A stretch of DNA of 64,000 nucleotides from NCBI RefSeq assembly GCF_006345805.1, contig NC_043001.1, positions 41,974,001-42,038,000 on the forward strand. The letters are read 5' to 3'. Below the pieces are notes generated by a model. It was not told the origin of the DNA, made no database searches, and worked only from the letters and a program-made list of their open reading frames with translations. The stretch comes from Octopus sinensis (taxonomy: Eukaryota). Both the position numbers and the translations under genes were made by a program. Numbering within the stretch: position 1 is the first letter of the stretch; each line of letters begins with the position of its first letter. Positions 15,186 through 51,067 of the stretch are shown here, piece after piece.

Positions 15186-15206
15186 TGTAAACAAATCTGG
15201 TCATGT

Positions 15207-21235: not shown

Positions 21236-21320
21236 ATTGAAAGAAAAGAATAATCACTTCTTTTCTGTCTTAAAGTAATGTTAATGATGTTTAATGCCAT
21301 TTTATCTACATAATTTTTAG

Positions 21321-21535: not shown

Positions 21536-21543
21536 ACCATAGT

Positions 21544-21546
<3 letters not shown>

Positions 21547-21584
<38 letters not shown>
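21547..21584. repeat. (TA)n microsatellite
   Basis: Seen directly. Confidence 0.95.
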
Positions 21585-21593
<9 letters not shown>

Positions 21594-24680: not shown

Positions 24681-25179
24681 GATGGTATAAGATGCCCTGT
24701 ATGTGAGTTCAATTAACTAAGATAAATTCACAAAAGTTGAAGGGCTCAAAAGTAAAGGGAAGAGCTACAAAACGGGTCTTCAAATTTATGTTAAAGGCTT
24801 TTCAAAAGTGGAGAAAATGAATGTTTTAAATATTCATGTGTATAAAGTGAATTGGGATGTGCACACTTGATCTGAGGCAATTTTATCCTAAGAGTATGTT
24901 CCCATTATAAAGTATGCGGACAGCAGAATTCAGATCTCTGAAAGCAATAAAATGTTAAGTGATAAACACAGGTATGGCATATGGGGAAGTGTCGAATATA
25001 GACTTGGGCTGGTCAATAGCTTTTGACTTAAATTTGGTAGATGGAAACTGTGCAGAATCTTATTACGACAGAACGACTTAAATACAACTAACATGTTTTA
25101 AAATGTTTTTCTCGGAAATGCATATAGTGAGACTTTCGAAACCTCACAAGATTTTCTGTACCAAGTTTAAAATGCTTAC

Positions 25180-25380
25180 TTGTCACTCTCGTCGTCAGAG
25201 ATAAAGTAAACCAGTGATTAGATCATTGGAGGCTTGTAACTAACGACGCCGTTGTTCACCAATTGTGATACACTATGAGAAAGACAGAAACGGTTAGTTT
25301 GTTTTTTCCACAGTTCTCCCACTCCTAAAACTAGTTGGAATATATATTGTAATCGGTCTTCAGAATAGTCCTATATGATT
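25180..25380 (-). other. Candidate exon (alternative first, poison or UTR) ending at a strong phase-2 donor
   Basis: Donor CAA|GTAAGC at 25180/25179. A long polypyrimidine tract with a TTAAC branch-like motif and GAG acceptor lies at 25381. Stops occur in the PSD frame (TAG near the start, TAA at 25220-25218). Confidence 0.35.
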
Positions 25381-27246: not shown

Positions 27247-27311
27247 CTGCGTACTTTTTCTTTGATCACTTCAAGATAGCTATCTGCTGAACCATTGTCG
27301 GCAGGAACCAT
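27247..27311 (-). CDS. PSD: Candidate alternative first coding exon of PSD (MVPADNGSADSYLEVIKEKVR + AG), in frame with the Sec7 exon
   Basis: ATG at 27311 with an in-frame TGA upstream (27338-27336), 21 codons + 2 nt, donor CAG|GTAATA at 27247/27246. Phase 2 matches the Sec7 exon. Lies in a CpG-rich patch. Confidence 0.65.
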
Positions 27312-30300: not shown

Positions 30301-31019
30301 AGAAAGAGAGAGAGAGAGTAATGGTAGCAAAAAGGTGATAGATAGATGCAGAAACAGGCAGTTGTAAGAATGTCAATAATGATTAACCTAGGGAGAGGGA
30401 GCAATGGCTGGCAGTATAGGATAATGTTAGTGGGTAAGAGAGGCTGTCAGTGGTGGGTAAGAGAGAGGTGATACTTGAAGGAAGAGTGATAGCTAGCAAT
30501 ATAGGAGAGTAAAAGATGCATCAGATCCAATCAATCCCTCTTTAAGCAGATATCATGATCAGAGAGACATCATAATGGCAGCTACATATCTGTTGGTGAG
30601 AGAGCAAGGAGTAAATCAAATAAATAGATCTGAGGCAATCTCTCATTACTCAGGCATCATGATCAGAGAGGCAAAGAGAGATACAAACAAAAGAAGAATG
30701 TGTGTGTGTGATACATATCAATGAAATCAGTATAAGAGGGTAATGTTAGCTGGTAAATGAAGGATCTCAATAAACGAGTAACTCAAGAGAGAGAGAGAGA
30801 GTGTGTGTGTGTTGGTTGGCAGTAGAGTAAAAGAAGTGGTATCTTGGAAACCAACAAGTTTGATGTAAAGCTACTTATACAACATGATAGGAAGGAGGAA
30901 AAAATAGACACAAATGGTGGTAGAGAGGTATTGAGTGTGGAAGATCTAATGTTTCTCTCAATCCAAGGGTGACATGATAAAGTTAAGAGAGAGGGTATTG
31001 AATCAGCACAAAAGGCAGC

Positions 31020-32050
31020 TGGTACAAAATAGGTAAAATGCCAAATAATACATACATATACACACAAAACATATTTCAGCTGATATCACTGTTCACATTT
31101 TAATGTGTTCCACCAATGCTTGCATGAATGGTCAGATCTTTTCCAGCATCATATACCTCCAATCAATGTAGCTCTTTGTAATCTTCATGAGATGCAGCAT
31201 CTTGACATCAGTTTTCAGCACTTCATCTCAAGTGTTCTGGGTTTCCTTTTCCATAGGTTCCATTCACTTTGAGTGCTTAACACTTCTTTATGCAGCTGTC
31301 ATCATCCATATCACATGCCTATACCACAACAGTTGTCTCTCTTGTACACATCTAATTCTCTTTATTTCCACTTTTTCTCTCAATTCATTTGTATCACATG
31401 CATGTATACTAATATATTTACACATATCTCAAACCATGCTCACTTCATTACTCACTAGTCTTGAATACACATCTGCAATCAAAACTCACATCTCTCTACC
31501 ATGTAGAGCTACACTGTACACAAGCATCAATTTGAGAGAAAATCCCTCTATTGCTAGCTGGAGAGAAAGTTCCTTGAATTTTTCCAGCCCATTCTTACTC
31601 TAGCTACTATGTTCTCAAAACACACAACTCTACAACCAATTAGGTTGCTTAGATAACAGAAGCTACTAACTACTAGGGAATCATTTTAGACATTTGAGAG
31701 TAACTATTTCCTGCAAACTCTTTGTGTTTATTACACCTGTGTACCTGCACATATGGAGTCAACCATCTCTGTCAGCCTGCTCTTCTTTACTCATTGTTTA
31801 CACCGGGTCAACTGCATGGAATTTTCACCTATTCCTTTTTCTAAACAATCTTGGCCCTATCTCTGATAATAGCATGTTTTTGTCTTCAATCCTATTTACT
31901 AAAACTTTGATCTTTGCTCAGTTTTGCTTAAGGCTTTTCAGTTTTGGGTTTTGCTTCCATGCCTGAAATTTCCTCTCTAAATCTACAGTGTTATAGTTGC
32001 ATGCACGAGTTACCATGGGAAGCCAATTAGTTTTTGTGTGGAGGTTGTGG
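31020..32050 (-). mobile_element. Old RTE LINE relic (RT C-terminus to tail)
   Basis: DLERKFQAWKQN..KSLKQN, ..KFKELSL.., and tail remnant catgcaagcattggtggaacacattaaaatg. Confidence 0.6.
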
Positions 32051-32099
32051 AAAGAAATGTGTCTGCATGGATAATGGTTCACTTGTGCTAAATGAGGAT

Positions 32100-33048
32100 G
32101 CAAAGAGACAAGTTTGGAGACGTCACTATGAAAGGTTGCTCAATAAAGAAAATGAATGGGAGAAAGAGAGTCAGGGAAAAGCACCACTGATGCTATATTT
32201 CTGGTAAGACAGCTGCAGGAGAAATACCAAGCCAAAGGTAAACCTCTGTACCTGGCTTTCGTTGACATGGAGAAAGCCTTTGACAGAGTCCTCCGATCCC
32301 TTTTCTGGTGGTTAATGAGGAAACTAGAGATACATAAATGGTTAGTGAGAGCTGTGCGAGCCATGTACAGGGACACTGTCAGTAAGGTGAGGGTTGGCAA
32401 TGAGTACAGTGAAGAATTCCGGGTAGAAGTAGGGGTCCACCAGGGTTCAGTCCTCAACCCCCTCCTATTTATCATAGTTCTCCAAGCAATAACAGGAATT
32501 CAAGATAGGATGCCTCTGGCAGCTCCTCTATGCTGATGACCTTACTCTAATTGCTGAGTCCCTATCAGAACTATAGAAGTTTCAAGTATGGAAGCAAGGA
32601 TTAGAATCGAGGGCCTTAGAGTCAACCTAGCTAAGACCAAAGTCCTAATAAGTAGGAAGGCAGACAAACCACATACCCCTTCAGGTGGATGGCCCTGCTT
32701 GATATGTAGAAAAGGTGTTGGTAGAAACTCTATAAGATGTACCCAGTGTAAGCTATGGACACATAAGAGGTGCACCAATATGAAAGGAAGGATAACTGGG
32801 AAGATCTCGGCAAGCCAAGTGAGACCATAACCTCGTGGCCATAAAAAGCACCATTTGAGCATGGCTGTTGCCAGTACCACCTGAGTGGCCCTCAAGTTGG
32901 TGGCACGTAAAAGCGGGCATCCAGCTGTAGAAACTTTGCCAGATCAGATTGGAGCCTAGTGCAGCCATCTGATTTGCCAGACCTCAGTCAAATTGTCCAA
33001 CCCATGCTAGCATGGAAAGCAGACGTTAAATGATGATGATGGTGATGA
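32100..33048 (+). mobile_element. RTE LINE with two internal deletions (RT domains, partial PHD finger, 3' tail)
   Basis: GKSTTDAIFLVRQLQEKY..LAFVDMEKAFDRV..VGVHQGSVLNPLLF, LYADDL, WPCLICRKGVGRNSIRCTQCKLWTHKRC, and tail ttaaatgatgatgat. Confidence 0.9.
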
Positions 33049-35599
33049 TATGCTGAGTTTGATATTTTAATTGTTTACTTGATTCTCTTTAAAGGGACAA
33101 TATCTGTCCACAACAAATGCAGTTTTCTTGTTGCAACTATAGGCTGATTTGCTAACAATATCTATTACAAACTTCACTCAGCAAGCCATGCCTTTTGCAA
33201 AATTGGACTTGATCAACTTGTCAAAATCTAAAACCTATAAATATCAAATACAATACAAATGGTTCTGTTGCTGCTACCAGAGAAATGTGGTTCACATTTC
33301 ATGACAGCAAGGAGACCTTAGAGGAAAAAGTCATCATCTTGGGTTCATCAATCTCACTGCTTGCTGTCTAACTGATTGTTGAACCCAAGTTTCACAAGCA
33401 TTAAATGTTTGTGAACAGACTATTTGATTTTTACGCAGTTCATCTTTATAAAAGACTACTTTATCATGTCAAAACTGTACATCTTTTGCAGCACTCCATG
33501 TTACAACTTTGCTCTAGTTACTACACCTGGTCTTTCTTTCCCAGAACATTAGTTCCTTCACTGCTCATGTCATTTCCACAGGTTCAAGTGGAACATTAAT
33601 AATATCAATCTCACTAGTTTAAGAAGGTTTTTAAAGACCATAGGTACTACCTCTTCCTCTAGACACACACACACACACATACACAAATGGAGATAGTATC
33701 AATTAAGTACAATCTGGTTTGGAAACATCTAAAGCATATTACAACTGATGGTAAAAAAATATTAAAAAAACCTCAGTGGAAAAGGTTTTGTTGGACAAGC
33801 CTACAAAGACAGTTATAGACTGGGTTGTGCAAAACATTTTTTTTTAATACCACATTATTTATCAGAAGGCACTTAGGGGAAAACATTTAGTCTATTGCTT
33901 AATACAAACCAATAATAACAGTAAATTTTATTTGATTGCATACACTCAATCATCAGAGTTTCAAACAATTTTGGAAGAATTAGAAGTTAAATAGAGTTCA
34001 TTGTATCATGCTAATTGTAAGATAGCTTAGTAATGGTAAAGTTTTTTTTTAAACTTCAGATGGAGATTGACATTTTGGGGGGAAATGAGAAAAACTGTGC
34101 TCAACTGCAAATGGTTGCAGAAATTGGAATTTTTAGCTACCTTAACCATGCATTTTAATGAGTTCAGTCTTAGAAAACAACTCAGAGCTAATATGCAACA
34201 TAATATTCTGCAGTGAAGATTTTTCAATGTAGATTAATCTTTTAATCCCAGCTTATAAATAACTTCAACCACTTTCTCTATGAAAAATACAACCAAGAAG
34301 GAAATCCATTTGCTCTCGAATATGCTCATGACATTCTCACTTGTCTGAAGCCACAGTTTCAATAGAGTTTGTTAAATCCCAATGAAAATATGAAAGCATT
34401 AAAAAGAAAACATGACCAACTTTTATAAATGCCTCCTAGGCAAAGGATATGCTTTTTTTAAAGCCCTAAGCTCAGGAATGTGTTTTATCATTTGGCATAA
34501 ACTATTTATGGCGGGGGAGGGGGGCATTTTCAAAGATTACATATATTAATAAGTCAGTGTTAACTGATCATCACTTACAGTTAGTTTTGATTACAGGAAA
34601 CAAGATTTGAACTATTGTTTAACAAAATTTTGTTTCCACAAAAATAGCAACAATTTCAATTGATAGAGCATAGTTTATGTAGGAATCTACTCCAATAATG
34701 AAAAACAAGTGACTAAAAATACGATTTCCATAGCCTGGTACTGTACAATCATAGTCTCATCTCTTATTCAGCTTGTTTCAAGGTTTACAGCCTATTGCCT
34801 AAGAAATAAAATCAGTTCCACTGTATAGCTAAATGTGAACAATTCCTGAATTTTTTATACAGTATTAACTGGAAAACAGCATATTTAGCAAAAATATGTT
34901 ATAACAATGAAAGAAGGGAAAGAACTATGCTTCAGTGTGATAAACAGAACAAGCAAAACTAGTTCACAGCAAAACATGTACCCTAAACCTTAGGTTGAAT
35001 GGACCTTGATTTATTTTTTAGATATAGAACTGTTTTGTAGAGTAAAAAGGGGGAGAGGGAATGAAGTTGTTGAAATAGGTTAAAGAATTATTGAAAGAAA
35101 AGCAAGGGATGTATATGAGTGGGAGTGAGAGGGAAAAAAGAATGAAAAGAGTTCATAGAAAGTATTGGAGTTATGAATTAAAACAGGGCATTCTTTATAA
35201 ATAAGGTGCCAGTTTCACTTTATCAGACTATAGTTGCTTTCACTTTGGTAAGCAAGCATGTCTTAATAGGAATTTTGATGAATTATGATTTTATGATACA
35301 ATTAAATTTTTAATAGTGCTGATTTTGCTCATGTGTTTTTTTGTTACTTCAGGGGTATCCAAAGGTACAGTATTCAATGCATTCTTTACTTTTTTTTTAG
35401 GATGGTAGGCTAAATTTTACCTGTTGTCAGGTTTATACAGTGTTCCTTGGTTTCCAAATTATTCACATTTAAAAAATTGTGCAATCCTTACAAATTAAAT
35501 TTACATAGAGTAATAGAAATTAAAGAAAAAGAAAGAATTTAAAAGAAAGTGAACTTAAATGCTGCATAGAAATTCTAGTTAATTGATAAATTAGAATAA

Positions 35600-36850
35600 A
35601 GTGTTCCAGCAGCATGTGTTTGTGACTTTTACAGTGTTAAAAGCTAAGTTGTTTCAGATATATGCAAATCAAAGAATAAATTGTGACAGCTCTCTTTAAA
35701 AATCAAGAGTTAGCACTAAACACAGCTCTGCAGTGTGTAACAGACAATATATGAGCTGTGTTTAATATGTTCAAGAAAAATGTAGAGTGTGTGAAATCTG
35801 CAAGTGAAACTTTTGGAAAACATGTTAAGGCTTTTTGGAATACAGTTAAGGCTGGGTGGTAGGGCAGTTTAGAAAAAGCAGAGCAATGTGAACAAAAAAG
35901 CCTATAGTGACTCTTGGCACAGTCACTTCACAGACTGAGCTATGTAGAAAATTTTTAAATGAACTTATTAGATGTAAGGACTTTATTTTGTCCAAAGTTT
36001 ATACTGCTGCTGAAACTAACTTGTTCTATTGGGCTGTAAATATTTCACACTACAAACATAAATACAACACTCTTGGTTGCTTTATATGTGCAAATGCTTG
36101 CATCATTTTTAGTCTAGGTGTTAGGGAAATCAAAAGAAACTATGTACATGGTTTCCTTCAGAGATTTTTTTTCTGACTAACTTTCCAATCCTGATGTGAG
36201 ATGCTTTCAGACAGATTTTCTTGCATTATATAAAGCTTCTTGACAATGCCTAATGCTGAGAATTAAATAAATAGAAATTGCAAGATTAAATGTTTTTCTT
36301 TATCACCTTATACATCTTCAGTTAGTCAACCAATGGAAAATGCAATAATTATTGCTTGCAAGAGAGTGTATAAGAATTTTAGAGGGAAAAAAATTATGGA
36401 TGTGTTAGAGGATGAAGAAGATACAAAAGGAACCAGGACACTTCAGAATCGATGAGTCTTACAACTTAAAAATCTGAATTTACACTTCGCAGATGTTTGG
36501 AAGGAGTGGAGTACAACTTTCACAGACTGATGGATGAAATTGTCGAATAATATAGAACCCAATTTGGATTTTGAAGGATTTCAGGCAATAGACTTTTAGT
36601 ACACCTTTATAAATGCTGATAACTGGGATATAACTGAAAGGGGGTCTGTTATCAAGTCCTTGCTAATGAAGAAATTGTGAATTAGGTTCTACTAACAAGA
36701 CAGAAGAAAAAGACATTGAAGAAAGTACAGCAGCATAATCAACACTGCCTGAAATAATGAATCTCACAGACTACACAAGGATATTGCACCTTACTATGAA
36801 CATTTTTGATAGTTCAGAGTGATCATAATGAAGAAAACATCAAAGTTGTA
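35600..36850 (+). mobile_element. Highly degraded Tigger/pogo transposase relic
   Basis: KVYTAAETNLFYW resembles the YNADETGLFW motif; later xCANA and QPMENAII (QPMDQGII-like) remnants, with many stops. Confidence 0.4.
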
Positions 36851-38347
36851 AACAACTGAGGCTAGATGCATATTGCCCTAATTTACTTCTTATCCAACTC
36901 CAGCAGCACATACATCACAACTGCCTACAAACAAACAGAACACACCAGTGCCTTCTTGTGTTCACATCCCAGAAAAGTCTAGATATAGCAGATTCCCTTC
37001 CATTTCCATTATGGTTATGGCAAAATACTTTTCAAATACACTGTGAAAAAGGTAAATGAAAATTATACATATATAATTGTAATTTAATAAACTTTAAACC
37101 ATGCAGTAATGTATATTGCATTAAAACTTTTTTAGATCAGAAACAATAGAAAACTGGCTTTATGTTACCCTCAATGTAATAGATTTTGGATATTAACATA
37201 TGTATATTTCATCCAATTAGCCTACTTACTTTCAACTTAAATTTTGGTGTTAATGGATAAGCATTCCCCACTATTAGTCTATTAAATTACAGGTGTAGTA
37301 AGACCTGCGTTTCTTTTAGTTTCCATGTACGAGATCCACTGACAGCCAAATAATAACTCTTCCATTTGATAGTCTGTATTTTAAAATAATATCATAATTT
37401 TGTCAATTAAATCACTCTTAAATCATTTTAAATAAGTCACTTATTAATATGATTAGGAATAGTATGAATTAAATCCTTTCTGTGCAAGAGTTTCAGCTAA
37501 CCTTAAAATTATAGTACTTATTAATGCTTCAGGATATCATGCTGCCTCTGAAATTATAAATCAATTTAATGAAATAATCTAAGAAGTGACATTAAGACCT
37601 AACTTCTAAGTAAAAAGTAGCTATATCCTCTGATAAAATTTTTTTTTTTTTTAAATATAAATTTAGAAATATAAAATTTAGTATGAACATAAAATAAAGA
37701 TATCAAATAATCTAACAAACACAAAAATTAAGAATGCCATAAAATATGTTACTTTAAATTCAATCATTTCAGCAAACAAAAGTATGCCTTGTAAAAAAAA
37801 AAAAAAAATCAACAAAGAAATTTCTAAATTTTTTAAAATAAAATTCTTGGAATATTACAGTTCATATGATTGAAATTAATACATTTTTGCTTTGATTATT
37901 AAACAGCTAGATGGAACAGACATAGTAAATCATGTTTTTCTCTAGGTTATGGACAAGAAAGGAAGACATATATTTTATAAATATAGTCAACATAATTTCT
38001 AATATTGACACAAAGTCCAAGATGTTTTAGAGTAAAGGACTAATGATATCATGGTCATTTCCAAATAAAATCATTATAGAAATGATTGGAAAGTATGTCC
38101 CAAAGTAAGTTCACAGAATGGGAACCAGTTTCAAAATAAAGGTAATTCCACAGTTACTCCCCTTGAATAATGAACTTGAAAATCCTTCTGGTCCATTTTT
38201 CTGATTGTGTGTGTAACAAAGAATTTACGAACACACATACACGTGTGTGAACTTAGTATGTGATAGATGCACTGAAGCGGTATGTATTAGGAAATGTTTA
38301 TTCTAAAATGCCAAAATGGTTCACAAGTAGTTGATAGTTTTTGTTAC

Positions 38348-38401
38348 CTCAGAAATGTAATAAACAAGGGAAGTGGTTGCTCTGAAAGTATAGCAGCCCA
38401 T
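38348..38401 (-). CDS. Candidate alternative first coding exon (MGCYTFRATTSLVYYISE), phase 0
   Basis: Strong Kozak context aacATGG, in-frame TAG upstream, 18 codons, donor GAG|GTAACA at 38348/38347. It needs a phase 0-to-2 adapter or a more distal acceptor. Confidence 0.45.
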
Positions 38402-41400
38402 GTTAGAATGAGCTGGAAGTTCAGAGAGCTGCTACTGCTACTGACAACAAAGATTTTTTTTAAATTTTAGAATAAAGAGCAGATTGCATGATAATTGTGC
38501 TAAAACTGTTATGTTGTTTTGGCAGTTCACTGTCTCTGAGCAACAAATCATGACAAAACGAACGATTTTCTGAATGTCTGTCCAGTATATCAACCATGGC
38601 TATGCATCTCCCTCAACCCAGTTTGGTGGTGCTGTAGAGATGAGAAGTACCAATTTTTTTTTATCTCTTGTTCAACTAACAGAAAAAGGCTCACAAACAA
38701 CTTCCCACAAAAGAAATCTATTCAGTCAGCTGCCAGCTTTAGACTCAATATAATCATACTAGTAATACAGATGCTCAGTTCTCAACCACAGTAATCACAG
38801 AATTCATTTTCACAATCACAACATACCAACAAATACAATCAACACGATCAGCTTTCATTTCTCAGGAAATGGACTTTGGTGAATCTCACAGAAATTGCAA
38901 CTGATCAAGAAGAAGATTCAGGACTTTCAGATCTTTATAAAAATTTCATTTTTCTACTTGATACGTTCAGAAGCTTTTGAAACACTTTTGAATAGCAGAC
39001 CATTCTCACAGCAAGCAATTCCATCAATAGCTAAATCATTCTCATTTACATTTTTCTTTCATTTATTTTGTTATTTTTCATGCAATTATAGCTCATTTAT
39101 AGCTCAACTGTTTTGCACAGGTATTTTGTATTTCCTTTCAATTGTTATTTTTTTTTTCCATGTTGGTTTGTTTACCATACAAACATACAGCATAAATTTT
39201 TCTACCCATAGAAAAATGATATCAGCCATTTCTTCAGCTACTCTCATTAAAAAGCATCAGAAAAAAACTGAATCAACTCAAATGTGTGTTTCTTAAGATT
39301 TCATTCAGTCTTTCCCAAGCATCTGTATCAACTCACAAATCAAACACATTTGAATATTTACACCTTGTATACATATCATACAGCCTCTCTATATAAACAG
39401 CTGAACTGATGGTCCAATATATGAATGACTCGATTTCTCCTGCACATTTTCACGATCATTCTTCTTAGATTTAAAAATGTACAGCAACTAATACTTATTC
39501 TTTTTCTTTTCTTTATTACACATGTACAAACATGTAATAGTTGACTATCTGATGAGGAAGTCATGAAGTTTATTTGCTACTATTAACCTGCCATGCTTGC
39601 TTCTGTTAGTCTACATACTCACATACACAGGCAAAAATATATACATCCACATTAACTAAATGAAAATCTCACCCTTCATCAAATTTGGCATTATTCAGCT
39701 CTTCACATCTGTTAAACACCATTCTACTAGTTATCAATTACTGCTACAGCTGACAACATTCGATTTAGTTAAATCTACTCTATGTATAATATATAAACTG
39801 ATCTAACAAATTAACTTCACAGCTGAGGAAACTACAAATGGGAATCACATTAGCAAAAAGTTGGCTCCAGCCTAGCACATCAACACCCTTACACAAACAC
39901 ACACTTTGAACTAGCACACAAGAGAACACATACATATATGCTGCCACACACAAATATGAATTCAAATTTGATCTTCACTTCCCTTGAATTGAACTCTCCT
40001 ATTATACTCTCAATATGAAGAAAAAGAAACTTCATTTTAAAAATATTATTCAGCACATTCATTCATGTTCTGTTTTCATTTTCCAAATGCTTAGATCATG
40101 TGGTAATGCACAAGAATCATTACCAGAATCTGTTAAAGAAGAGAGAAGATTTCTGAATACAAGAATTTGGTTCTGGTGATTCATGACCTCTTTGCTTAAT
40201 TGCTGGAACAGATTTAGGAGGTGGCTGAATTCATGCTGGTCTGAAGAGAATCATGTGCTCAGTGAGTTTCCACAGTATACCTTTCCTCTTGGAAGACTTT
40301 GTACTTTGTATGGGGGAAGAATTTATGCACATATTTTCTTTCATTTAAAGAAACTACATTAGTACCACAGAAGTTATTAGAGATGGTGGTGGGGGGGGGG
40401 TGAGTGAAGGATTAGAACTAGCTGCTCTAAAGACTTTTCACCATGACTGTCACATGAATGATGACCACTTGGTTTCTCCTACACATGAAATGAAATACAA
40501 GATAATGCACTGTTCTTACTTTCACAGAAAATAGTTTGATTAGAAATATGCAACCTTCACCTTCTCATGAAAAGTTCTAAAGTTTCCTGCTTTCATTGTC
40601 ATCTAATATTGGAAATGATTTTGAAGAATCTTTTTGTATTGCATTTTCTATTACAGAATTCAAATGATGAATATCAGAACTAGAACTTCCAGATATAGTG
40701 TGTACTGGGGTGGTCTGTGGATTGATCTAGTTGATAATGGAAGGAAGAAAGACTTGGGAATTGGCTTCAGCTGAAGAGAAACTTTAGGAACCATAGCTAA
40801 GAGAAGTTTGAGGAAAGACATTCTATGTTTTAATTAATTAACACAAATGTTATTCTCCTTATCTTGCTAGCCATCTTTCAAATTGTTTCTGATACTTTTC
40901 TGTTCTGTGCTTGGAACAATGGCATTGACAATAGAAAAATGAACAGTTAAAAAAATTTGGTTCACAACGTCATAATGATTGACAGGACAAAGTCCAGTTT
41001 CATTGTCTTCCCTGCAAGAAAACAATATCGACCCCTACTGTTGTAATATTGTAATTATGTCTTCCTTCTTCCAATTAAGGTCTCCATTGGTTTCTACTTC
41101 GCAAATATATTTAACTAAATCATAATATTTTTCTCTTGGTAGTCAAAAGTTGAGGTGAATGCTAATTTATCAGAACTATCCTTTGAGCTAAATATGTTGA
41201 AGACTTCAGATCCAAATACAGACAGTTTACAATGATATCCACACAACTGGCAGGGGAAAATTCTGGTTTAGATTTCCATGCTAAACTGTTATAATCTAAT
41301 AATTTATAAAAGCATTTCTGGAAGAGATTCAGTGCTATCCATTGTTATATATGGTGTATAGGTAGGTGAAGTGGTGCATGAAAGAGAGACACAAATGATG

Positions 41401-41699
41401 ACTACAAAGAGCAAGAGCATGTCTTCAATATAATATATCCAAGAAGGTGAGTGGAAGAGAGCATGGTATTAGTAAAATCAGGAAGGGTGGGTAAAAGCTG
41501 CTACGGTGCAATCCCTCCACACTCAAGCTTCATAATTTTAAAGGATAGAGGAAGGAAGAGTAATAGCATATGGATAGTGGTGTTAAGGTAGAGGATATTC
41601 ACTATGCACAGATCAAGTACTTTCCTCTAAATAATAGTGGTATGGTACAGTAAGTAAAAGAGAGAGAGTACAGAAGAGGTAGCAAATAGAAGAGATGGT

Positions 41700-44040
41700 G
41701 GGTAAATATGAGGATACAGACTAGGCAATATGCAAGAGTGGTGTACAAGAGGGATCGGCAATACCATGCATTACCACACGATATGGTCCTTCATCGTTTC
41801 TTTTATCAAATTTAGTATCTTGAGACAATTTTTACCACCTCATCCCAAGTCTTCCTCAGTTTTTGCTTTTTTACAGATACCATGCACTTACAGAGCTTAG
41901 CACTTCTTTATGTAGCTGCCATCCTCGATTTGTACCACATACTCACACCAGTAGTTTCCTCTCTTGCACACTACATCTGATTCCTCTTATACACTTATCA
42001 GTTCATTTACATTTTGTTGTTCATGCACACTAACAAGGAATATCTAACAAAGTATGCTTGCTTCATTTCTTTCTCAACTTAGAAGATCTTTCATGTTACC
42101 ATGCAGCAATGCACTTCACACACAAGCATCTTACAATTGTCAGCAGAGTTCACGGATCTTCCTCCGACTCATTCTGGATATCATGCTTTCAGAACACTAG
42201 CTCTTGTCACTGCTTATGAGGTCACCCAGACAACAAGCATGCTATTGACAGATTCAACTGGATATTTGAGAACAATTACTTCCCAGGAGCTCAGTCCTTA
42301 TTACCTAGTGTACCTGCTGCATGTGTCTACTGTTAACACTGAGTATAACTTAAAGAATTTCTATCAATTTCTTTTCTTCAAATGAAGTACAACTATTTCC
42401 CTTATGCTATAAAGATTCTGTCTTCCTCCCTACTTATTAAAATTTTTTTTTTTTAAATTTACCTTAAGGCACATCAACTGCAGATTTTGCTTCCATGTTT
42501 GGAACTTTTGCTTCAATTGTTTAAGAGATTTTGCAATGAGAGCTAAGTTACCAGCATACAGGGGTTTCCAAGGACACTCACTCACTCACTCAAGCTCTTG
42601 CGGAATTCCTGAGACTTTTCAATAATGAGATGAAAGGCAAAAATATGGCCTGCAGTAGATTGATTTAGCACGAATATGGTTTTAACAGGAGAGCACTAAT
42701 GAACCCCTACCAACATATTTCATTGCTGACTGTCTCCCAACATACCTTTAGCCCCCATTCTTTTATCTACACAGACTTCTTTCTTGCATGCTACATCTGA
42801 TTCCTCTTATGCTCAGTTTTTCTCTCTGCCCATTTGTACTAAGTTATTCTGAAGCACTTACACTGCACATCCAACAGAACAAGCCTGCTTCATTTCCTTC
42901 TAGTCTTCTCAAGTTCTTTGTATTCAAGGCTCATGTCTCACTATCATATAGCATCACAGTTCTAACAACAACATCATACAATCTGCTTGTCACTCTGAGG
43001 GAAAAGACAATTGTTAGCAGTAGCAGTAGAAGCTCCCTGAACTTTTTCCAGTCTGTTCTTACTCTGGCTACCATACTTTCAGAGTAACTATCTTCCTTAC
43101 TAATTATGTCTTCTAGATAACAAAAACTTCTAGTGAGCCATCTGGATATTTAAGAGTCTACTTCTGGATTACTCCAAGTACATACCATGCTAGTGCATCT
43201 GTCACATATGAAGCTTATGTTCTTTGTTAGTCTGCCTGTGATTCCACAGTTGTGTGCAAAGCTTACACTGTGTAAAGTATATGGAGTTTATAACAAATTG
43301 TTTCTTGCATATTGAGCAAAACCATTTCCCTGAAAATACTAAGCCTGTCTTGTTTCCTACTTACTAAAGTCTTAGTCTTTGCTAAGTTTACCTTAAGGCT
43401 TTTCAATTTTAGGTTTAGCTTCTGTGAGTCTTAAACTATGATAGCCTGTAGGACTAGGATGACTATAAGAGAACTGAACCTTGATAAACATCTATTTTCA
43501 TGCTAAATTCATCACCAAAATTGTTGACAACTCTCGCTTTACTTAATGAATCTTTGTACAAAGCATGTACAGCCCTCACAAGCCATTTGTCTATACCTAA
43601 TTTCTTCAATGACCACCAAATTACTGAAAATGGTACTCTGTTAAATGCTTTCTCAAAACAATGAAAGTTAGGAATAGTGGTTAATTCTTAGCCAAGTATT
43701 TCTCCAGCAAGTTGCTGCATAGAGAAGATTGCATCTTCTAGGCATGAAGTCTAACTGCATTTCAACTATGTCCACTATCACAAATCAATTGTGCTATGAT
43801 TCTCCTTCATAACCTGATCCAGTAGTTTGATTCCTCTTAAATGCTGCTCTCTAAGGCCTTTGTGCAGTGTATGATGATTCTGCTATGCCAGTCATTAAGT
43901 ATGATACCTTCCTGTATGATTTGATTAACTATCCAGATGGTGATCATGTATCCTACCAAACCAGATACTTTGAATGTCTCTGCAACTATCCCTGATAGAC
44001 CACCAGCTTCCCCTCTTTTATTGTATTCATCCATTGTTCA
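41700..44040 (-). mobile_element. Cluster of old RTE LINE relics
   Basis: AGGLSGIVAETFKVSG..IVNQIIQEGIILNDWHSRII..RGIKLLDQVMK, plus LKPKIESLKVNLAKTK and KFRELLL remnants homologous to the 58-59-kb copy. Confidence 0.6.
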
Positions 44041-46812
44041 GCTAACAGTATACCTATCCAACTCCTGCTGTTACTATTACCCACCAGAAGAATTTGTACT
44101 GCTTTCTCTTGTCTAAGGAATTTGGTGGAGGAACCATCCCCTTTTACCTCTTGCACACACCCACTTATCTCTGCTCCAGTATTTCTGCAATCTCACCAGA
44201 CTTACTTTTCATCGTGCTTATGTTTATAGTTGCAGCCCTAAAGTTTTGGAATCAGTGGGAAGAAAGCTGTTTGGTTTTTTTGTTCATAACTGTTTGGCAG
44301 TATCTGCACTCATGAGGAATAAGAAAAATTGTGCTGCAGCTTGCCAGCTTTACATAAATAATCACATAAATAATCATATTTGTCCCTTCAAATAATTTGT
44401 CATCATTCATTCATTCTCCAATACTTGCTACATATGGTATATGCGCCAACTACAATTATCATCATTATATAACAAATATTTGTAATGCCGTTAACATTAC
44501 CATTATTGTCAGCATATGCATATATAAGTACAAAAATTATAAGTGTCTGAATCAGATGCAGACAATTTTTTTTAAAGTCTAAAAGTGCCTGTTACAAATT
44601 ATATAACCTCACTGTATTTACCAATAGCTAAACTGGAACTGAATCCCTGGGTTAAACAGCATAGCACAGTCAAAATGTGGCTGAAATGCTTCCTGCTCAG
44701 GCTTTAAAGTTATTTTCTATACAAGTTACTGGCAGTCATCAGACAAGCTACACTCCATGGATGAAGACGTTTTAATAAAACTGAGCAAAAATAATATACA
44801 TGGAATGGAAGAGAAAGATACAACAGAACATTTGCCAAGCCTTGAAAACACAAGAACTTGGCTGCCCAGCTCTTTAAGTACATCAACTTAATGAAGTATG
44901 GATTATAAAAAAAATTATCTTTGCTCTAAATAGTCATCTCCATTTATTTGTTGCACAACTAGAGCATTGTTTTATAACATTTGGCTTAAACCACAGGTAA
45001 ATGAAACAGACGCAAGCTTTATATGAAAAGCAATAAGGTTTCACAGCTACTCATACAACCAGGCTCAAATGCATTATAAGATCATTATGAACTGAAAGAT
45101 AAATTGTTTTAGATCTGTGCGTATGTTGGGGTTCTACCTTAAAGAGTTTTAGAACCTGGAACTATGTGGTTGGGAAGCAAACTTCTTACCACACAGACTT
45201 CATATGGACACTTATTTTATCAATATATTCATCGCACCACAAAAATAAAGACAAAAGAAACCAAATGTAAACACACACACACAGACATGCTTTCCATAAC
45301 AGTTTTTATCGATGAAAGAAATCTCAGGGAAGGTTTTTGTCAACCGTGTCTATAGGAGAAAACACCTGCATTAGATGCTGTGCATTGGGAATGAATTTCT
45401 TCAGGGGGGATATGAGAAAGGTTAGGAGAGAGAAGGTGGTTAGGAAGGAGAAAAGAATGTAAGTAGGCTGGTATAAAAAGATATATAAATATAAATACAT
45501 ATAGATAAATAGAATGATACACATGTATACATACACAAAAATACTGACAAAATCATTTGCATTGCCAGTAGTATTTAATGTATGGTATTTCTTAACAGAA
45601 AAAATGAACATCAATGAAAAATCTCAAGAAATTCCAGTTGAAGTGGTGAGTTCTATTAAATTGTTACCAATAAAAATGTAAAAATGTACAGAAAGAAAAT
45701 AGGTTTACTTTAGATTTACTACTTTTTCTTCAGCAAACTTTTGAATCTTCAAAAATACTTCTGCATTAATTGTACTAGCTTAACCTCTCGGCTTTATAAA
45801 TAAATAAATAAATAAATAATGACTAAAAAACAATTTCCAGTGTCCTCTTGCTTCACCTTTTTCTGCTTTTCTGCAATCAAATACCCACCAATTATCAAGT
45901 TTTAACACTTCTCATAGTATAATTTAGTATTTTGTTTTTAATTTAGTGTAATTCAATCTCCCCATCTATTTTCAACAAATCAGGAGACTAAAATCTCAAC
46001 TTCTTGCTGAAACTGATTCTGTACTGAGTGCACCATTAGTTATACAGTATTACCAAAATTTATTTTAAGATTGCAAAATCATTGAATACTTAGTAATAAA
46101 AATAAATCAGTTCTCTTTCTATCCTCTCAAGAGGTAACTAATCACTACCAAATTTACCCTACAATTTTCTGTAGAGACACATGAATTGCTTATACATTGA
46201 TAGTCATACCTCCTCACCTTATTTGCCTGAAAACTGATTTTGACTGTCAATTGATTTCTGTCAAAAAAGAGATTTTTTTTCAACAAATATATCGAAACAG
46301 CTTAGCATAGTGAAAACTTGACTCCACCAATCTTTGTATACTATGTACCACCAAAAACACACGCACTAACATCATATATCTACAGATCATAGCTACACTT
46401 GTTCTCTATTCCTAATAAAGGATTTTTTTTTTAATGGAAATACTAAAATACCTAGTGAAAACTTCCTTTTCATCCTTTTATTCTATCTTGCAACAATATC
46501 ATTTAACAAATGAATTTTTACAGCTATATCACCTTCCATCAGAAAATAATCTTTAAACTTAAAATGTCAGTATTATAGGAAATGATTCATTAAATATAAC
46601 ATTTTCTGTAAATAAAAATAAATCTAATAAATTTACTTACAAATTTAACCAGTTCTAAAAGTTTTAGCTACAGTTGACATTCTAGTCTTTTATCCTGGAT
46701 TACAGAATAAAACAGTTAAAACAATAGTTTAGCACCACAGAAGAGAAATACCTAAATGAAAAAAAACTATTTCAAAAAAGGCTAATATGGGAAATTTTAT
46801 AAATATACTCAC

Positions 46813-48551
46813 TTTTTACAGAGATGTCTTGAGACATCAGATTTACGAAATCCATCCAAATTGTAAAGCCGTTTAGCTAAGCGAGCAGCTGATGGACGAT
46901 CCACACTTTTGAATGGTTGGTGATATAAGCAATCAGAATCTAAATGTTCATTGCCAGGTTCCACAGTTTCTCGAAGACTAGTTATAAAATCAGGTTTATT
47001 GTCTACTCCTATAAAAGCTTCCTTTGATACACCCTCCTCAGCAGACTCAACACCAATGCGGGAATTAAGTATTGATGCTACAAGGTTAGAAGTTGGTGCT
47101 TCTATTTTCCTATCAGTTGCCTCTGAAGAGACTGGTGACTGTGGTTCTAGAAGACTGGAAAGAGGTCCACCGTCATTACATACTCCTGAAGGAATGTTTG
47201 AGTCTGTAGCACCTTCAACTGAGGAATCCACTTTAGAACAAGTGGAAGCAGCATCTTTTGTTTTAGTCTCCTTACCTTTAGGTTTGATAGCCCGTGGTTC
47301 ATCAAGGCTTATGAAACCTGGCATGAAGACACGATCAGATGATTTTTCACTTGATTTCCGTTCCGGTGAGCTCTGCAGACTCCTTGAAACAGGCACCAGT
47401 CCATCCTTATCACCTAATTTCTCCAGAGAGGATCCAGAGCTCTGATATGCAAGAGTATCTAGAGAGTAAGCCAAATTATCATCATCTATATCAATGCTGA
47501 CTAATGTGATATCAGTGCCTGACTGTAGATAGTTTTCATGGCTTTTACTTGTACGAACCAATGAATGACTGCCTCTTGAAGCAGCAACTATTTTTTCAGC
47601 ACTTTTACTCGTTACTATATTCGATTTTACTTCATTGTCTGATGATGATGATGCCATTGTGCTGCTTTTATCATCTGAAGACTCCACTACTTCAGGACTG
47701 GGCTCAGAATCACTATTTGATAGACTTCGTTTGGAGCTCTCCTTCATTGTGAATAATTGTGTGCATTGTTGTTGCTGATAATATTGATGGTTGGCAGGGT
47801 CAAGAGGATGGGGTTCAAACTGATCCCAAGATTCCATAGAACTGGAGGGAGTTTGTCGCAGAGACGGAATGAACTCCTCTGGACTTGCAATGGGAGGACT
47901 TGACATAGAAAGAGGTGGTGATGGCCAGTTCATGTTACCATCATTTCTATTGTCTGCAGGAGCAGACTCAACCCGACCAAGAGGTGTGTGTACTGTTTTG
48001 GGGTTATCAGGCCCGCTAAAAGAGTGATGCCGGGGCGCCCCTACTACTCTGTTTTCATTCACTTTCTTCTCGGCTGCTATGCGATTGAACTCTGCAGAGA
48101 TGAGACAAATTTCTTCATCATCATCATCTTCTTCTTCTTCTTCTTCTTCTTCTGCAATATTACTGCCATAAACCATTTGCTTATAAGGCACCTTTTTGGG
48201 ACTGTCTACCTTTTTGGGAGATTTGTGTGGAGCTGTTGTCTTAATGATCATATCACCTGTCATGACAAATGTCTCAAAACCAGTTCCTTTGCCTGGAGAC
48301 TCTGCAGGAGTTCCTTCTTTTGGGGATTCTTTTTTAGTGGTTGCATTGGGTGTGCACTGAGCCACGGCATCCAAGATACCGTTCTCAAAGCACATGGCCT
48401 TTACATAGCTGTCGTTGTGTTTAGGGTTAACATCTGAAGGACGACGTAACTTGCCATTACTGCTAGCAGAGCTTTTATGCAGACTGCAAGATACTGGGAT
48501 TGGGATGCGGGATGGACTGCTGGAGACCCTGTCAACCATCTTGACTGGCAT
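46813..48551 (-). CDS. PSD: PH and SEC7 domain-containing protein (EFA6-type Arf6 GEF), large first coding exon of the long isoform: disordered N-terminus, MTED-like motif, SxIP motifs, start of Sec7
   Basis: 581-aa ORF ending AARLAKRLYNLDGFRKSDVSRHLCKK, matching the start of the EFA6/PSD Sec7 domain. Acceptor ttttcttctttgcag at 48596/48595. An in-frame TAA (48581-48579) precedes the ATG at 48551. Donor AA|GTGAGT at 46813/46812 (phase 2). Confidence 0.93.
48110..48153 (-). repeat. (GAA)n(GAT)n coding trinucleotide run encoding EEEEEEEDDDDEE
   Basis: Seen directly within the 581-aa ORF. Confidence 0.9.
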
Positions 48552-51067
48552 CAAACTCTGGTTCCTTCTGTTTGGCCATTAGTCATTTGCTCTTTCTGCA
48601 AAGAAGAAAAGAAAAAAAATTGAAGAATTTAACAATCAGTCACTTGGATTAGCCAATAATTAAATCCAACATTAATGAAATGGAAAAAAAAATTGATGTT
48701 TTCAGAACTTTATAAACTATGCAATTTGCAATTTTCCTTCTGTTTCATTTACAAATTTTTGTTTACAACATAATATATTAGTATAACAATATTTCAATGA
48801 ATTTAATTTGTGAAGTATTATATATACTTGTATTTTGTTTATATGAGTTGTTAATGATGAACAAATTTCACAGATTGTAAACATTAGATTTTTAATGAAA
48901 CAATATTTGAAGGATTTAGTTTCTGTCATTATGTACTCTAGCTGATAATGATACAAATTTATTTCATATAAGGTTACATCACACTTGTTCTCTATGCTAT
49001 TAGTAAGTGTATTTTATATGTGACACCAGACAATAAACAAAGACATTTGAAATAAGTTTTACTATGATGTATGTTGTTACAGAGAGAAATTCAATGGCTG
49101 TCAAAGAGAAACTGTATGAAAGTTTCTATTCCCTTTTTAAAACAGTGGTTGAATTCTTACAAGACTCTTATTCTGTTCTTTGTGATGAACTAAGAAACAT
49201 CAAGCATGACATTGCTTCTATGACAGATATTGTTCAATAAAGTTAATTGGTAACTGCAAGGAAAAGAGATGAAACTTTATCAAAGTAAAATCAGCCCAAT
49301 CACATTGGACTAGGGTTTGTGTTTACTTTTTGATTACAAAAGGACAAAGCTCTTAGAAGCTAGAGGTTATGTTTAGGGAGAAATAAGTACCTAGCAAACT
49401 TGTGACTAAGTACTTAAGAGCATTTATACATTTGTGAAAATTAAGTTAATTTCTCAAACTATGCATTCTTTTATAAAAATGTCTTCCTATAATAATATAG
49501 CATTAAGTGGCAGAAATCTCCAATTTCGTGAGTTTTCCTTTCAACCTAAATAATAATCTAATCACTTAACAAAAAAAAAAACAAAAATCCAAATATGAAA
49601 TATCCAATTATTCTAAAAGTAACTGAATATTTTAGCAGAAAATTACTTAAAATAGTGAAGTTCTGTTTAAAACTGGTTGAAAGGTAAACCTCATATATGT
49701 AATTGTATTACATCAAATACTAGTAATGATATTTCTGAATGTAAATGACTTAAATAATTCTGAAGTTCATTCAAGAAAAAAAAATTGAGCATAAAGAAAA
49801 ACAGAATTTAAGTCCAAAATAGAAAAGGCTTTCAGGTATAGCAAATTGGTGCCAGGAAGAATTTTGATATTTTGGAAAATTCCCAAGCTGTAAGCAAGTA
49901 TACTTTACAACAGATATTTATAGAACATCCATGGATAGATAAGAAAAAAAAGAGAACTAGACCAAAATATATAAAACAAAAAAAATACTAGAAATTAAAT
50001 GTTTACACGATAAATCAAGATTACATTGAATTTTTTAATTTTGCATCTGAAACTAAATATTATAATCAACAGATACAGACAACTGTTTATAGCTTTTCAG
50101 TTTACTTACTGTCATAAAAAAGGAGATACAAAGTAAGAGAACTACTTTTGTTATTAAGGAAATATTTTCCAATATAATGCATTAGAAGTATTATGCTACT
50201 AAACTGTGAAATGTAGACAGTAAAGGATGAAAAAATTTCAGAAGCTATTATGATTTATAGAATATATCTAAAATGTAGGAACTTTGAAAAAGAGACATCA
50301 ATATTTACAAGAAGGTAATGGAGTGAGTGCATATTATAAACCAGCTAATAACAACCTAAAGAAGGTAGATCACTGGATCCTTCAAATGGATTTAAAATTC
50401 TACTGAATCACAAGTTCTTGTTCTTAGACTGCAAGTAAAGGAGAGTGTGGTTTTGTTCTTAAAATATATATACATGTAACTTCATATATTGAGTAACCCT
50501 CATTAGTTTTGCTCAAGTAGATCTATGTGTGAAGATAACCAATCAATTGCTAGAGTACAATACACATACCTGGCAGCACAGGAATTTCAAAATGCACTGC
50601 ACTCTCCACCATACATTCTGCTGTTTGATTGCCATTTATTACCACATCATTCACTCAGACAGACTGTATCATTGTTTAGTTGTAGAAAATTTGGTTGCTG
50701 TGTCTATCAGGTTAACCAACACTGTAGAAGCATCTTTCTTTTACTCATGTCATAGTTGGTTGTGTGAAATCCTTTCTAGTATAGGCACAAGGCTTGAAAT
50801 TTTGGGGAGGGGGATATGTCAATTACATTGACCCCCAGTACACAACAGGTACTTAATTTATAATAAGAGTATTGCTGGCTGAGAGATATCTCATTGTAGA
50901 GGAATAGTATTTAACTGCTATTTCTAAATTTGGTATGTGGTGAAGCAATTTGCTGAACCCTTTTTTGTATAAGATTACCGATAAAGGTTATTTTAACATA
51001 CCAAACTACTTGGTAAAATTATTAATTAATTTTATTCTTTATTATTCTTCAGGATTTTTTTTTTTTA

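What the first reader, a model, noticed from the sequence alone, without database searches (positions are those of the whole stretch)
47190..48512. Mollusc EFA6 N-terminus carries an MTED-like motif and two SxIP motifs
GFETFVMTGDMIIKT (48281-48237) resembles the short microtubule elimination domain shared by C. elegans and Drosophila EFA-6 (as I recall it, FEAYMMTGDLIL) and reported absent from vertebrate EFA6. SRIP (48512-48501) and SNIP (47201-47190) fit the EB-binding SxIP consensus. This would extend the cortical microtubule-inhibiting module to lophotrochozoans, encoded within a single exon that the internal promoters bypass.
Basis: partly seen in the sequence, partly recalled or inferred. 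Interest (0 to 1): 0.7.

Follow-up and report, generated by a model that had tools for sequence, protein, structure and literature searches.

The report
Known microtubule-blocking motif in mollusc EFA6
The first coding exon of a mollusc EFA6/PSD gene carries the conserved 15-residue microtubule elimination motif and one conserved EB-binding-type SxIP motif, but a 2019 paper already reported both for mollusc EFA6, so this is a correct but ordinary annotation.

Summary
On the minus strand, 48281-48237 encodes GFETFVMTGDMIIKT, 48512-48501 encodes SRIP and 47201-47190 encodes SNIP. All three lie in one 1.78-kb exon of an EFA6/PSD (Sec7-PH) gene.

The motif aligns without gaps to the tested fly MTED peptide (FEAYMMTGDLIL; 7 of 12 identical, the rest conservative). 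It fits the published consensus ExxxMxG[D/E]. It is present in 63 of 69 relatives (chiton, gastropods, bivalves) and, by cluster membership, in two annelids and a bryozoan. AlphaFold2 predicts it as the only ordered element, a beta-hairpin, in an otherwise disordered N-terminus.

The N-terminal SRIP (consensus SPSRIPVPV, net positive context) is conserved across molluscs. SNIP is not: it is absent outside the two closest relatives, its context is acidic, and it is expected by chance.

The novelty claim fails. Qu et al. [quoted passage not shown] No lophotrochozoan MTED has been tested functionally. Internal promoters were not demonstrated.

Verdict: real, correctly interpreted, already known. 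Interest is low.

The parts
46813..48595 (-). First coding exon of the EFA6/PSD gene: short 5'UTR part, start codon, and about 580 codons of N-terminal region up to the pre-Sec7 block. Ends in phase 2.
   Evidence: Acceptor ttgcag| at 48597-48596 and donor |gtgagt at 46812-46811. tblastn of the full-length relative P0002 covers aa 1-563 in one piece. Nucleotide similarity to relative L001 is confined to 48639-46806.
48537..48551 (-). Two in-frame start codons: ATG 48551-48549 (MPVKMVDR) and ATG 48539-37 (MVDR). Most molluscs start at the second.
   Evidence: relatives begin MVDR... or MAIKMVDR....
48501..48512 (-). SRIP, a conserved N-terminal SxIP motif within MVDRVSSSPSRIPIPVS. Candidate EB1/EBH-binding microtubule-tip localisation signal.
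   Evidence: An SxI/LP lies within the first 32 residues in 53 of 69 relatives. Context net charge is +2 here, and averages +2.8 (range +1 to +4) over the 50 relatives with strict SxIP. It is a conserved island in alignment A4. EB binding itself was not tested.
48378..48386 (-). ENG, a three-residue conserved island between SRIP and the MTED. Function unknown.
   Evidence: N invariant and E, G at least 90% conserved in 28 mollusc N-termini; confirmed.
48237..48281 (-). GFETFVMTGDMIIKT, the microtubule elimination domain (MTED) core. Predicted beta-hairpin: strands TFVMT and MIIKT, turn G-D.
   Evidence: Gapless alignment to the fly MTED peptide APRFEAYMMTGDLILNLSRT. Present in 63 of 69 relatives. 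A motif profile finds 71 clusters at E<=1e-3 among 1.84 billion representatives. AF2 predicts strands at 90-94 and 97-101, with mean pLDDT about 89 over residues 91-100. Against the relative there are 2 synonymous and 0 non-synonymous differences over 45 nt.
47451..47561 (-). Conserved island LVRTSKSHENYLQ...VSIDIDD..AYSLDTL. By eye it also appears in arthropod and other EFA6 N-termini.
   Evidence: Conservation profile over 22 mollusc proteins. Similar strings are visible in P0071, P0082, P0099, P0205 and P0214.
47298..47336 (-). Conserved island DRVFMPGFISLDE (R.F.P.FI.L).
   Evidence: The bryozoan-type proteins have EFIPGFIRVDE.
47190..47201 (-). SNIP, which matches the SxIP regex but is most likely a chance match with no function.
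   Evidence: It lies in a stretch with no conservation. Only the two closest relatives have SDIP or SNIP there. Context has net charge -4 and no K/R. About 0.4 chance matches are expected per exon.
46813..46928 (-). Pre-Sec7 block LYHQPFKSVDRPSAARLAKRLYNLDGFRKSDVSRHLCKK, conserved across the EFA6/PSD family.
3714..46812 (-). 43.1-kb intron between the N-terminal exon and the first Sec7 exon.
3520..3713 (-). Next coding exon, inside the Sec7 domain. The rest of the gene lies beyond the start of the window.
   Evidence: tblastn gives 94% identity to P0002 aa 563-627. Pfam Sec7 scores 60 bits, E 2.3e-16. Splice sites were read.
48551..48586 (-). Upstream ORF of 11 codons (MTNGQTEGTRV*). Its stop overlaps the first ATG (TGATG).
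   Evidence: Read. The same arrangement (11 codons, TGATG overlap) occurs in relative L001. A regulatory role is only inferred.

Best explanation
The window holds the 5' part of a mollusc EFA6/PSD gene (an Arf6 exchange factor with Sec7, PH and coiled-coil regions). The closest named relative is a chiton.

Its single large first coding exon encodes an intrinsically disordered N-terminal region carrying a few short conserved motifs. One is an orthologous copy of the microtubule elimination domain (MTED, GFETFVMTGDMIIKT), predicted to fold as a small beta-hairpin.

By homology with fly and worm EFA-6, the C-terminal PH domain would anchor the protein to the plasma membrane. The MTED would then bind tubulin and block microtubule polymerisation at the cortex. 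The conserved basic SxIP motif at the extreme N-terminus (SPSRIPIPV) would bind EB proteins and help capture growing plus ends.

Shown here: sequence, exon structure, orthology, conservation, predicted hairpin. Inferred: tubulin binding, EB binding and cortical microtubule inhibition in this animal. SNIP is a chance match.
For: - Exact sequences and exon structure.
- Family assignment: all full-length relatives have Sec7+PH_9/PH, and the next exon scores as Sec7.
- The motif aligns without gaps to the fly peptide that bound tubulin and cut microtubule polymer about 10-fold in vitro (Qu 2019; alignment). It fits their consensus ExxxMxG[D/E].
- The T-G-D of the mollusc motif corresponds to worm S33-G34-D35. 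Mutating these reduces activity (Chen 2015; 2024 preprint).
- Conservation: 63 of 69 relatives. 71 clusters reach E<=1e-3 in an exhaustive HMM search, and every newly found one printed carries the core, with one variant (MTGN). Only some could be shown to be EFA6-type.
- Named non-mollusc carriers by cluster membership: the annelids Paralvinella and Ridgeia and the bryozoan Bugula.
- Only synonymous differences across the motif against a 74%-identical relative.
- AF2 predicts a hairpin at residues 90-101 (mean pLDDT about 89 over 91-100) in an otherwise disordered 130 residues. This matches the hairpin reported for worm MTED.
- SRIP is conserved with a positive context. That agrees with the need for favourable flanks and positive charges for EBH binding (PMC12695022) and with the Qu 2019 supplementary legend.
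Against: - No functional data exist for any lophotrochozoan MTED.
- In fly, removing both SxIP motifs did not weaken microtubule loss, so SxIP may be dispensable.
- In worm, the 18-aa motif alone was only weakly active. It was needed for binding TAC-1 and ZYG-8, so the mechanism may be indirect.
- Purified fly N-terminus showed no activity in vitro; only the synthetic peptide did.
- The worm letters could not be retrieved, so the alignment to worm rests on three numbered residues only.
- The AF2 model has low overall confidence (mean pLDDT 58.8, pTM 0.20).
Confidence: 0.85

Rival explanations
1. The conserved hairpin does not block tubulin directly. It is a docking or folding element that recruits microtubule-associated proteins (TACC and doublecortin-like kinase orthologues) or drives condensate formation, and these partners change microtubule dynamics.
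For: Chen 2015: TAC-1 and ZYG-8 bind the worm N-terminus only when the 18-aa motif is present, and the motif alone is weakly active. The 2024 preprint: the MTED is needed for tubulin-mutant-induced EFA-6 condensates and for TAC-1 recruitment. Further conserved islands in the mollusc exon (ENG; LVRTSKSHENYLQ...IDIDD; FMPGFI) suggest additional partners.
Against: The fly MTED peptide alone bound tubulin and inhibited polymerisation without cofactors. The two mechanisms are not mutually exclusive.
Confidence: 0.25
2. The resemblance to the MTED and SxIP motifs is chance similarity in a low-complexity disordered region and has no function.
For: SxIP-type matches are expected 0.39 times in this exon. 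SNIP is unconserved and acidic. Pfam finds nothing in the exon.
Against: ExxxMxG[DE] is expected only 0.007 times. The 15-mer is nearly invariant across mollusc classes and present in two annelids and a bryozoan, while its flanks are unalignable. Only synonymous changes occur in the motif. SRIP is conserved at the same position in 53 of 69 relatives. The chance reading holds for SNIP only.
Confidence: 0.02
3. The conserved N-terminal SPSRIPVPV block is not an EB-binding signal. It may be a proline-directed phosphorylation site, another proline-recognition ligand, or an N-terminal stability signal.
For: The block sits within about 15 residues of the initiator Met and includes SP and PxP elements. 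In fly, SxIP mutation did not change microtubule loss. No EB binding was tested here.
Against: The strict S-x-I-P core is kept in 50 of 69 relatives, always in a net positive, acid-poor context. Hydrophobic post-SxIP residues followed by a basic residue are the features found to raise EBH affinity. The fly Efa6 N-terminus tip-tracks.
Confidence: 0.2

Closest known systems
Drosophila melanogaster Efa6 N-terminus (MTED plus two SxIP motifs; Qu et al. 2019, eLife 8:e50319)
   Same: Same family (Sec7-PH) with a disordered N-terminus. The MTED core is F-E-x-[YF]-x-M-T-G-D-x-I-x, with 7 of 12 residues identical and the rest conservative. An SxIP (SRIP in both) lies upstream of the MTED in a basic context. 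The module lies N-terminal to the Sec7 domain.
   Different: Fly has two SxIP sites at aa 233-236 and 262-265 and an insect-type PDZ domain. The mollusc has one conserved SxIP at aa 10-13 and no PDZ (Pfam finds nothing). Spacing and all flanking sequence are unrelated. Fly is functionally tested; the mollusc is not.
C. elegans EFA-6 18-aa motif (aa 25-42; O'Rourke et al. 2010; Chen et al. 2015)
   Same: A short ordered motif in a disordered N-terminus near the protein start. Critical residues S33-G34-D35 correspond to T-G-D here. A beta-hairpin is predicted for both.
   Different: Worm has S where the mollusc and fly have T. The full worm letters could not be retrieved with the tools, so no residue-by-residue alignment was made.
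Mollusc Efa6 sequences already analysed in silico by Qu et al. 2019 (supplementary logos from 37 sequences of molluscs, nematodes and arthropods)
   Same: The same observation: MTED conserved in molluscs, and positively flanked SxIP sites in mollusc N-termini.
   Different: This window comes from a species whose protein was not among the database hits; the closest relatives are unnamed, at 75-77% identity. Annelids and bryozoans, found here, are not named in that paper.
Vertebrate PSD1-4 / EFA6A-D
   Same: Orthologous Sec7-PH-coiled-coil C-terminus (about 50% identity) and the pre-Sec7 block.
   Different: According to Qu 2019 they have no canonical MTED, only a divergent MxG[E/D] 'MTED-like' stretch without microtubule-eliminating activity. 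This was not re-tested properly here, because one search returned mostly short isoforms.
Stathmin N-terminal beta-hairpin cap on alpha-tubulin (own knowledge; analogy only)
   Same: A short peptide in a disordered protein that forms a hairpin, binds soluble tubulin and hinders assembly.
   Different: No sequence similarity. No structure of an MTED-tubulin complex exists. This is a mechanistic analogy and was not tested.

Membership tests
EFA6/PSD family of Arf6 exchange factors | Sec7 domain | tested here: met
   The exon at 3713-3520 scores as Pfam Sec7 (60 bits against a cutoff of 22), covering profile positions 60-121 only. The rest of the domain is off the window. The 75%-identical relative P0002 has a near-complete Sec7.
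EFA6/PSD family of Arf6 exchange factors | PH domain (PH_9 type) and C-terminal coiled coil after Sec7 | not testable with these tools
   These exons lie outside the 64-kb window. Relatives P0002, P0003 and others carry PF15410/PF00169.
EFA6/PSD family of Arf6 exchange factors | Family-specific pre-Sec7 block (SAxRLAKRLYxLxGFxxSDV) | tested here: met
   RPSAARLAKRLYNLDGFRKSDVSRHLCKK ends the exon. It is conserved in molluscs, arthropods and vertebrates.
MTED (microtubule elimination domain) of invertebrate EFA-6 | Consensus ExxxMxG[E/D] (Qu 2019) in the N-terminal half | tested here: met
   E-TFV-M-T-G-D at residues 89-96 (MVDR numbering). Chance expectation is 0.007.
MTED (microtubule elimination domain) of invertebrate EFA-6 | Alignable to the functionally tested fly and worm motifs | tested here: met
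   Fly: gapless alignment with 7 of 12 core identities.
MTED (microtubule elimination domain) of invertebrate EFA-6 | Conservation within an otherwise unalignable disordered N-terminus | tested here: met
MTED (microtubule elimination domain) of invertebrate EFA-6 | Binds tubulin and inhibits microtubule polymerisation | not testable with these tools
   This needs peptide pull-down or polymerisation assays, or expression in cells.
SxIP microtubule-tip localisation signal (EB1 EBH ligand) | [ST]-x-[IL]-P core in a disordered region | tested here: met
   Both SRIP and SNIP match, and the region is predicted disordered (for SRIP).
SxIP microtubule-tip localisation signal (EB1 EBH ligand) | Basic, Ser/Pro-rich, acid-poor flanks | tested here: met
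   SRIP: net +2, 3 K/R against 1 D/E. SNIP fails: net -4, no K/R. The rule comes from Honnappa 2009 as cited, and from PMC12695022.
SxIP microtubule-tip localisation signal (EB1 EBH ligand) | Evolutionary conservation of the site | tested here: met
   SRIP: 53 of 69 relatives at the same N-terminal position. SNIP is not conserved.
SxIP microtubule-tip localisation signal (EB1 EBH ligand) | Binding to EB proteins / plus-end tracking | not testable with these tools
   Needs EB1 pull-down, ITC or live imaging.

The most novel reading that the evidence does not exclude
The SxIP-plus-MTED pair may be an ancestral protostome 'capture and block' module whose MTED is a tubulin-capping beta-hairpin. 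It would be kept almost letter for letter ([FY]ETFxMTGDMII[KR]T) across molluscs, annelids and bryozoans, much more tightly than between fly and worm. It would have decayed independently in some heterobranch gastropods (for example Plakobranchus YEAHCLRDDMVICT) as well as in vertebrates. Such natural loss-of-motif lineages would give a comparative test of what cortical microtubule elimination is needed for.
Probability: 0.4. Interest if true: 0.35.

Novelty: already known. Interest (0 to 1): 0.15.

Why it matters
If the mollusc motif works like the fly one, cortical microtubule elimination by EFA6 is a protostome-wide mechanism limiting axon growth and regeneration, one that vertebrates lost or replaced (Qu 2019 proposes Kif21A). 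That inference is already in the literature.

This analysis adds modest points:
- The motif is kept nearly unchanged in two annelids and a bryozoan.
- It is the only predicted ordered element in the N-terminus.
- The N-terminal SRIP is as conserved as the MTED within molluscs.
- Some heterobranch snails have eroded the motif.

The near-invariant lophotrochozoan version could be a useful second peptide for structural work on the MTED-tubulin complex.

Tried and rejected
1. A motif-only search with the search for homologous proteins failed twice. In one search only 9 candidates shared words and none scored, so the word index cannot find a 15-residue motif.
2. A Sec7-PH query returned mostly short isoforms and did not even list the query's own parent protein. 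It could not be used to map MTED presence or absence across phyla or in vertebrates.
3. tblastn of the N-termini of short isoforms against the window found no alternative first exon in the 43-kb intron. The 'internal promoters' idea is therefore neither supported nor excluded.
4. Naming the many unnamed MTED-bearing proteins gave only three names (Bugula, Paralvinella, Ridgeia). Assembly accessions could not be turned into species names. P0091, which has the MTED at its extreme N-terminus, is equally distant from all named lophotrochozoans.
5. The worm motif letters were not available: O'Rourke 2010 is not held.
6. The Qu 2019 supplementary files held as text name no mollusc species.
7. The species of the window could not be determined. 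The best named relative is the chiton Liolophura sinensis, at only 47% identity in the N-terminal exon.
8. No fold search was run on the AF2 model, because a 12-residue hairpin in a low-pTM model would give meaningless matches.

Full report
**Observation.** Reverse-complement translation confirms the three strings at the stated coordinates: GFETFVMTGDMIIKT at 48281-48237, SRIP at 48512-48501 and SNIP at 47201-47190. They lie in one long minus-strand frame. These are the only two [ST]x[IL]P matches in that frame.

**Gene and exon.**
- The frame starts after a splice acceptor (ttgcag|, AG at 48597-48596).
- It has two in-frame ATGs. The first, at 48551, gives MPVKMVDR. The second, at 48539, gives MVDR, which is the start used by most mollusc relatives.
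- It ends at a phase-2 donor (AA|gtgagt, GT at 46812-46811).
- tblastn of a full-length relative (P0002, 1011 aa, Sec7 + PH) covers its residues 1-563 in one block at 48551-46812. Residues 563-627 then map to 3715-3521.
- The spliced junction reads ...HLCKK|[17 protein letters not shown], exactly as in P0002.
- The window therefore holds the first coding exon (48595-46813), a 43.1-kb intron and the first Sec7 exon (3713-3520). That exon scores as Pfam Sec7 at 60 bits. The rest of the gene is off the window.
- Nucleotide similarity to the contig of a related species (L001, encoding P0001) runs from 48639 to 46806 at 74% identity and stops at both exon borders. This independently supports a single exon.

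**Family and source organism.** All 69 proteins found with the exon product are PH-and-SEC7 (PSD/EFA6) proteins wherever the model is full length. All named ones are molluscs: the chiton Liolophura sinensis is best at 47% identity, followed by Patella, Haliotis, caenogastropods, heterobranchs and bivalves. Two unnamed entries are 75-77% identical. The source is a mollusc without an annotated genome in the collection, and I could not name it.

**Is the motif an MTED?**
- Qu et al. 2019 give the fly peptide used in their tubulin assays as APRFEAYMMTGDLILNLSRT, and the consensus as ExxxMxG[E/D].
- The window motif aligns to the fly peptide without gaps. F, E, M, T, G, D and I are identical (7 of the 12 core positions). 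A/T, Y/F, M/V, L/M and L/I are conservative.
- The worm residues reported as critical, S33, G34 and D35, correspond to T-G-D here.
- A match to ExxxMxG[DE] is expected 0.007 times in a protein of this size and composition.

**Conservation.**
- 63 of 69 relatives carry [FY][EDQ][TA][FY]xMTG[DE], and 59 carry the strict form.
- In an alignment of 28 mollusc N-termini the only conserved islands in the first 110 residues are M..R..SPSRIPxPV, ENG and GFETFxMTGDMIIxT. Everything between them is unalignable.
- Over the 45 nt of the motif, the window and its 74%-identical relative differ at two synonymous sites only.
- An exhaustive HMMER search of 1.84 billion representative proteins with a 44-position motif profile gave 71 clusters at E<=1e-3 and 21 at E<=1e-10. 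Every newly found cluster printed carries the core, with one variant (MTGN). Several of those I read are N-terminal-exon products ending in the pre-Sec7 block.
- Cluster membership puts names on three non-mollusc carriers. These are the bryozoan Bugula neritina (GFHTFVMTGDAIIRT), the annelid Paralvinella palmiformis (RFETFVMTGDMIIQT, in a 1373-aa PSD protein) and the annelid Ridgeia piscesae (GFETFMMTGDMIIRT).
- Some heterobranch gastropods have an eroded motif, for example Plakobranchus ocellatus YEAHCLRDDMVICT.

**Structure.** AlphaFold2 on the first 130 residues with the 28-sequence alignment predicts disorder throughout. The exception is a beta-hairpin with strands at 90-94 (TFVMT) and 97-101 (MIIKT) and G-D in the turn. 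Mean pLDDT is about 89 over residues 91-100, against a whole-model mean of 58.8. A 2024 preprint reports the same kind of hairpin prediction for the worm MTED. Pfam has no model for anything in this exon.

**SxIP motifs.** By composition, 0.39 [ST]xIP matches are expected in this Ser/Pro-rich exon (P>=1 = 0.33, P>=2 = 0.06). The regex alone therefore proves nothing.
- *SRIP* is different. An SxI/LP sits within the first 32 residues of 53 of 69 relatives, usually as SPSRIPVPV[RK]. Its context is always net positive: mean +2.8 (range +1 to +4) over the 50 relatives with strict SxIP, and +2 here. Hydrophobic post-SxIP residues and nearby positive charge are what raise affinity for the EB1 EBH domain (PMC12695022).
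- *SNIP* lies in an unconserved stretch, is shared only with the two closest relatives (as SDIP and SNIP), and has four acidic and no basic residues around it. I regard it as a chance match.
- The putatively non-mollusc relatives lack the N-terminal SxIP. They carry S[RK]IPKP-type motifs downstream of the MTED instead, and heterobranchs add ESHIPR and SKIPGP. Basic SxIP sites near the MTED are thus a recurrent feature whose position varies.

**Mechanism (inferred).** In fly and worm the PH domain holds EFA-6 at the cortex. [quoted passage not shown] The mollusc protein has all the sequence elements for the same mechanism. An alternative or additional mode is docking of TACC and DCLK orthologues or condensate formation, which comes from the worm work. 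Nothing has been tested in a lophotrochozoan.

**Comparison with the literature.** Qu et al. [quoted passage not shown] The preprint's supplementary legend says the logos were built from 37 sequences of molluscs, nematodes and arthropods, and that positively flanked SxIP/SxLP sites occur in molluscs. Chen et al. 2015 already describe the motif as found in invertebrate family members, citing O'Rourke 2010. I did not see annelids or bryozoans named in those texts, so that part is a small increment.

**Internal promoters.** I found no alternative first exon in the intron by protein similarity, and there are no transcript data. Short Sec7-PH proteins lacking the N-terminus exist in many taxa. One unnamed relative, P0071, starts just before the LVRTSKS island, so MTED-less isoforms are plausible. 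Many of these short proteins may, however, be truncated gene models.

Noticed in passing
window 48586-48551 (minus strand); L001 about 966-1001: An 11-codon upstream ORF (MTNGQTEGTRV*) has a stop that overlaps the first ATG of the main frame (TGATG). The related species has the same layout (MTDGKSGGVGG*, also 11 codons with a TGATG overlap). This suggests conserved translational control of EFA6.
   Followed up: partly
window 48386-48378 (ENG), 47561-47451 (LVRTSKSHENYLQ...VSIDIDD..AYSLDTL), 47387-47361 (SRSLQSSPE), 47336-47298 (DRVFMPGFISLDE), minus strand: The disordered N-terminus has further short conserved islands of unknown function. By eye, the LVRxSKSxENYLQ...IDIxD island also appears in arthropod and other unnamed EFA6 N-termini, and the FIPGFI island in bryozoan-type ones.
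   Followed up: partly
relatives P0037, P0035, P0042, P0040: Some heterobranch gastropods, including the sacoglossan Plakobranchus ocellatus, have a degraded MTED (YEAHCLRDDMVICT; HKTLLMTGDMVY; RFDSQLLTGEML) while keeping the rest of the protein. This may be an independent loss of the microtubule-eliminating function.
   Followed up: partly
relatives P0050-P0055, P0065-P0069, P0194-P0202: The putatively non-mollusc MTED-bearing proteins (two clusters contain annelid members) lack the N-terminal SxIP. They carry one to several S[RK]IPKP-type motifs downstream of the MTED, so the order of the two motifs is not fixed.
   Followed up: no
P0091, P0193, P0200: Unnamed Sec7-PH proteins (P0091 comes from a JGI sample, 3300018840) have an MTED (CEAFIMTGEMMIRTS, closer to the fly EAY form) within the first 25 residues. 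The taxon could not be identified.
   Followed up: partly
window 48152-48111 (minus strand): A (GAA)n/(GAT)n trinucleotide run encodes EEEEEEEEDDDDEE just after the MTED region. The acidic tract is shorter and different in the closest relative (DDDDEAD), so its length is not conserved.
   Followed up: no
window 51259-59534: Upstream of the gene lie retroelement remains. Reverse-transcriptase ORFs at 53811-54881 and 58992-59534 score as Pfam RVT_1. There is an ORF with a GIY-YIG-like start at 53087-53560, which is my reading and has no Pfam hit. Two similar ORFs on opposite strands sit at 51259-51915 and 57527-58012. Long (TG/CA)n-type microsatellites lie at about 52.1-52.5 kb and 56.7-57.5 kb.
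   Followed up: partly
(tool behaviour): The word-indexed protein search with a Sec7-PH query listed only proteins of about 400-710 aa. It omitted the query's own 1011-aa parent, so absence from such a list says nothing about long isoforms.
   Followed up: no
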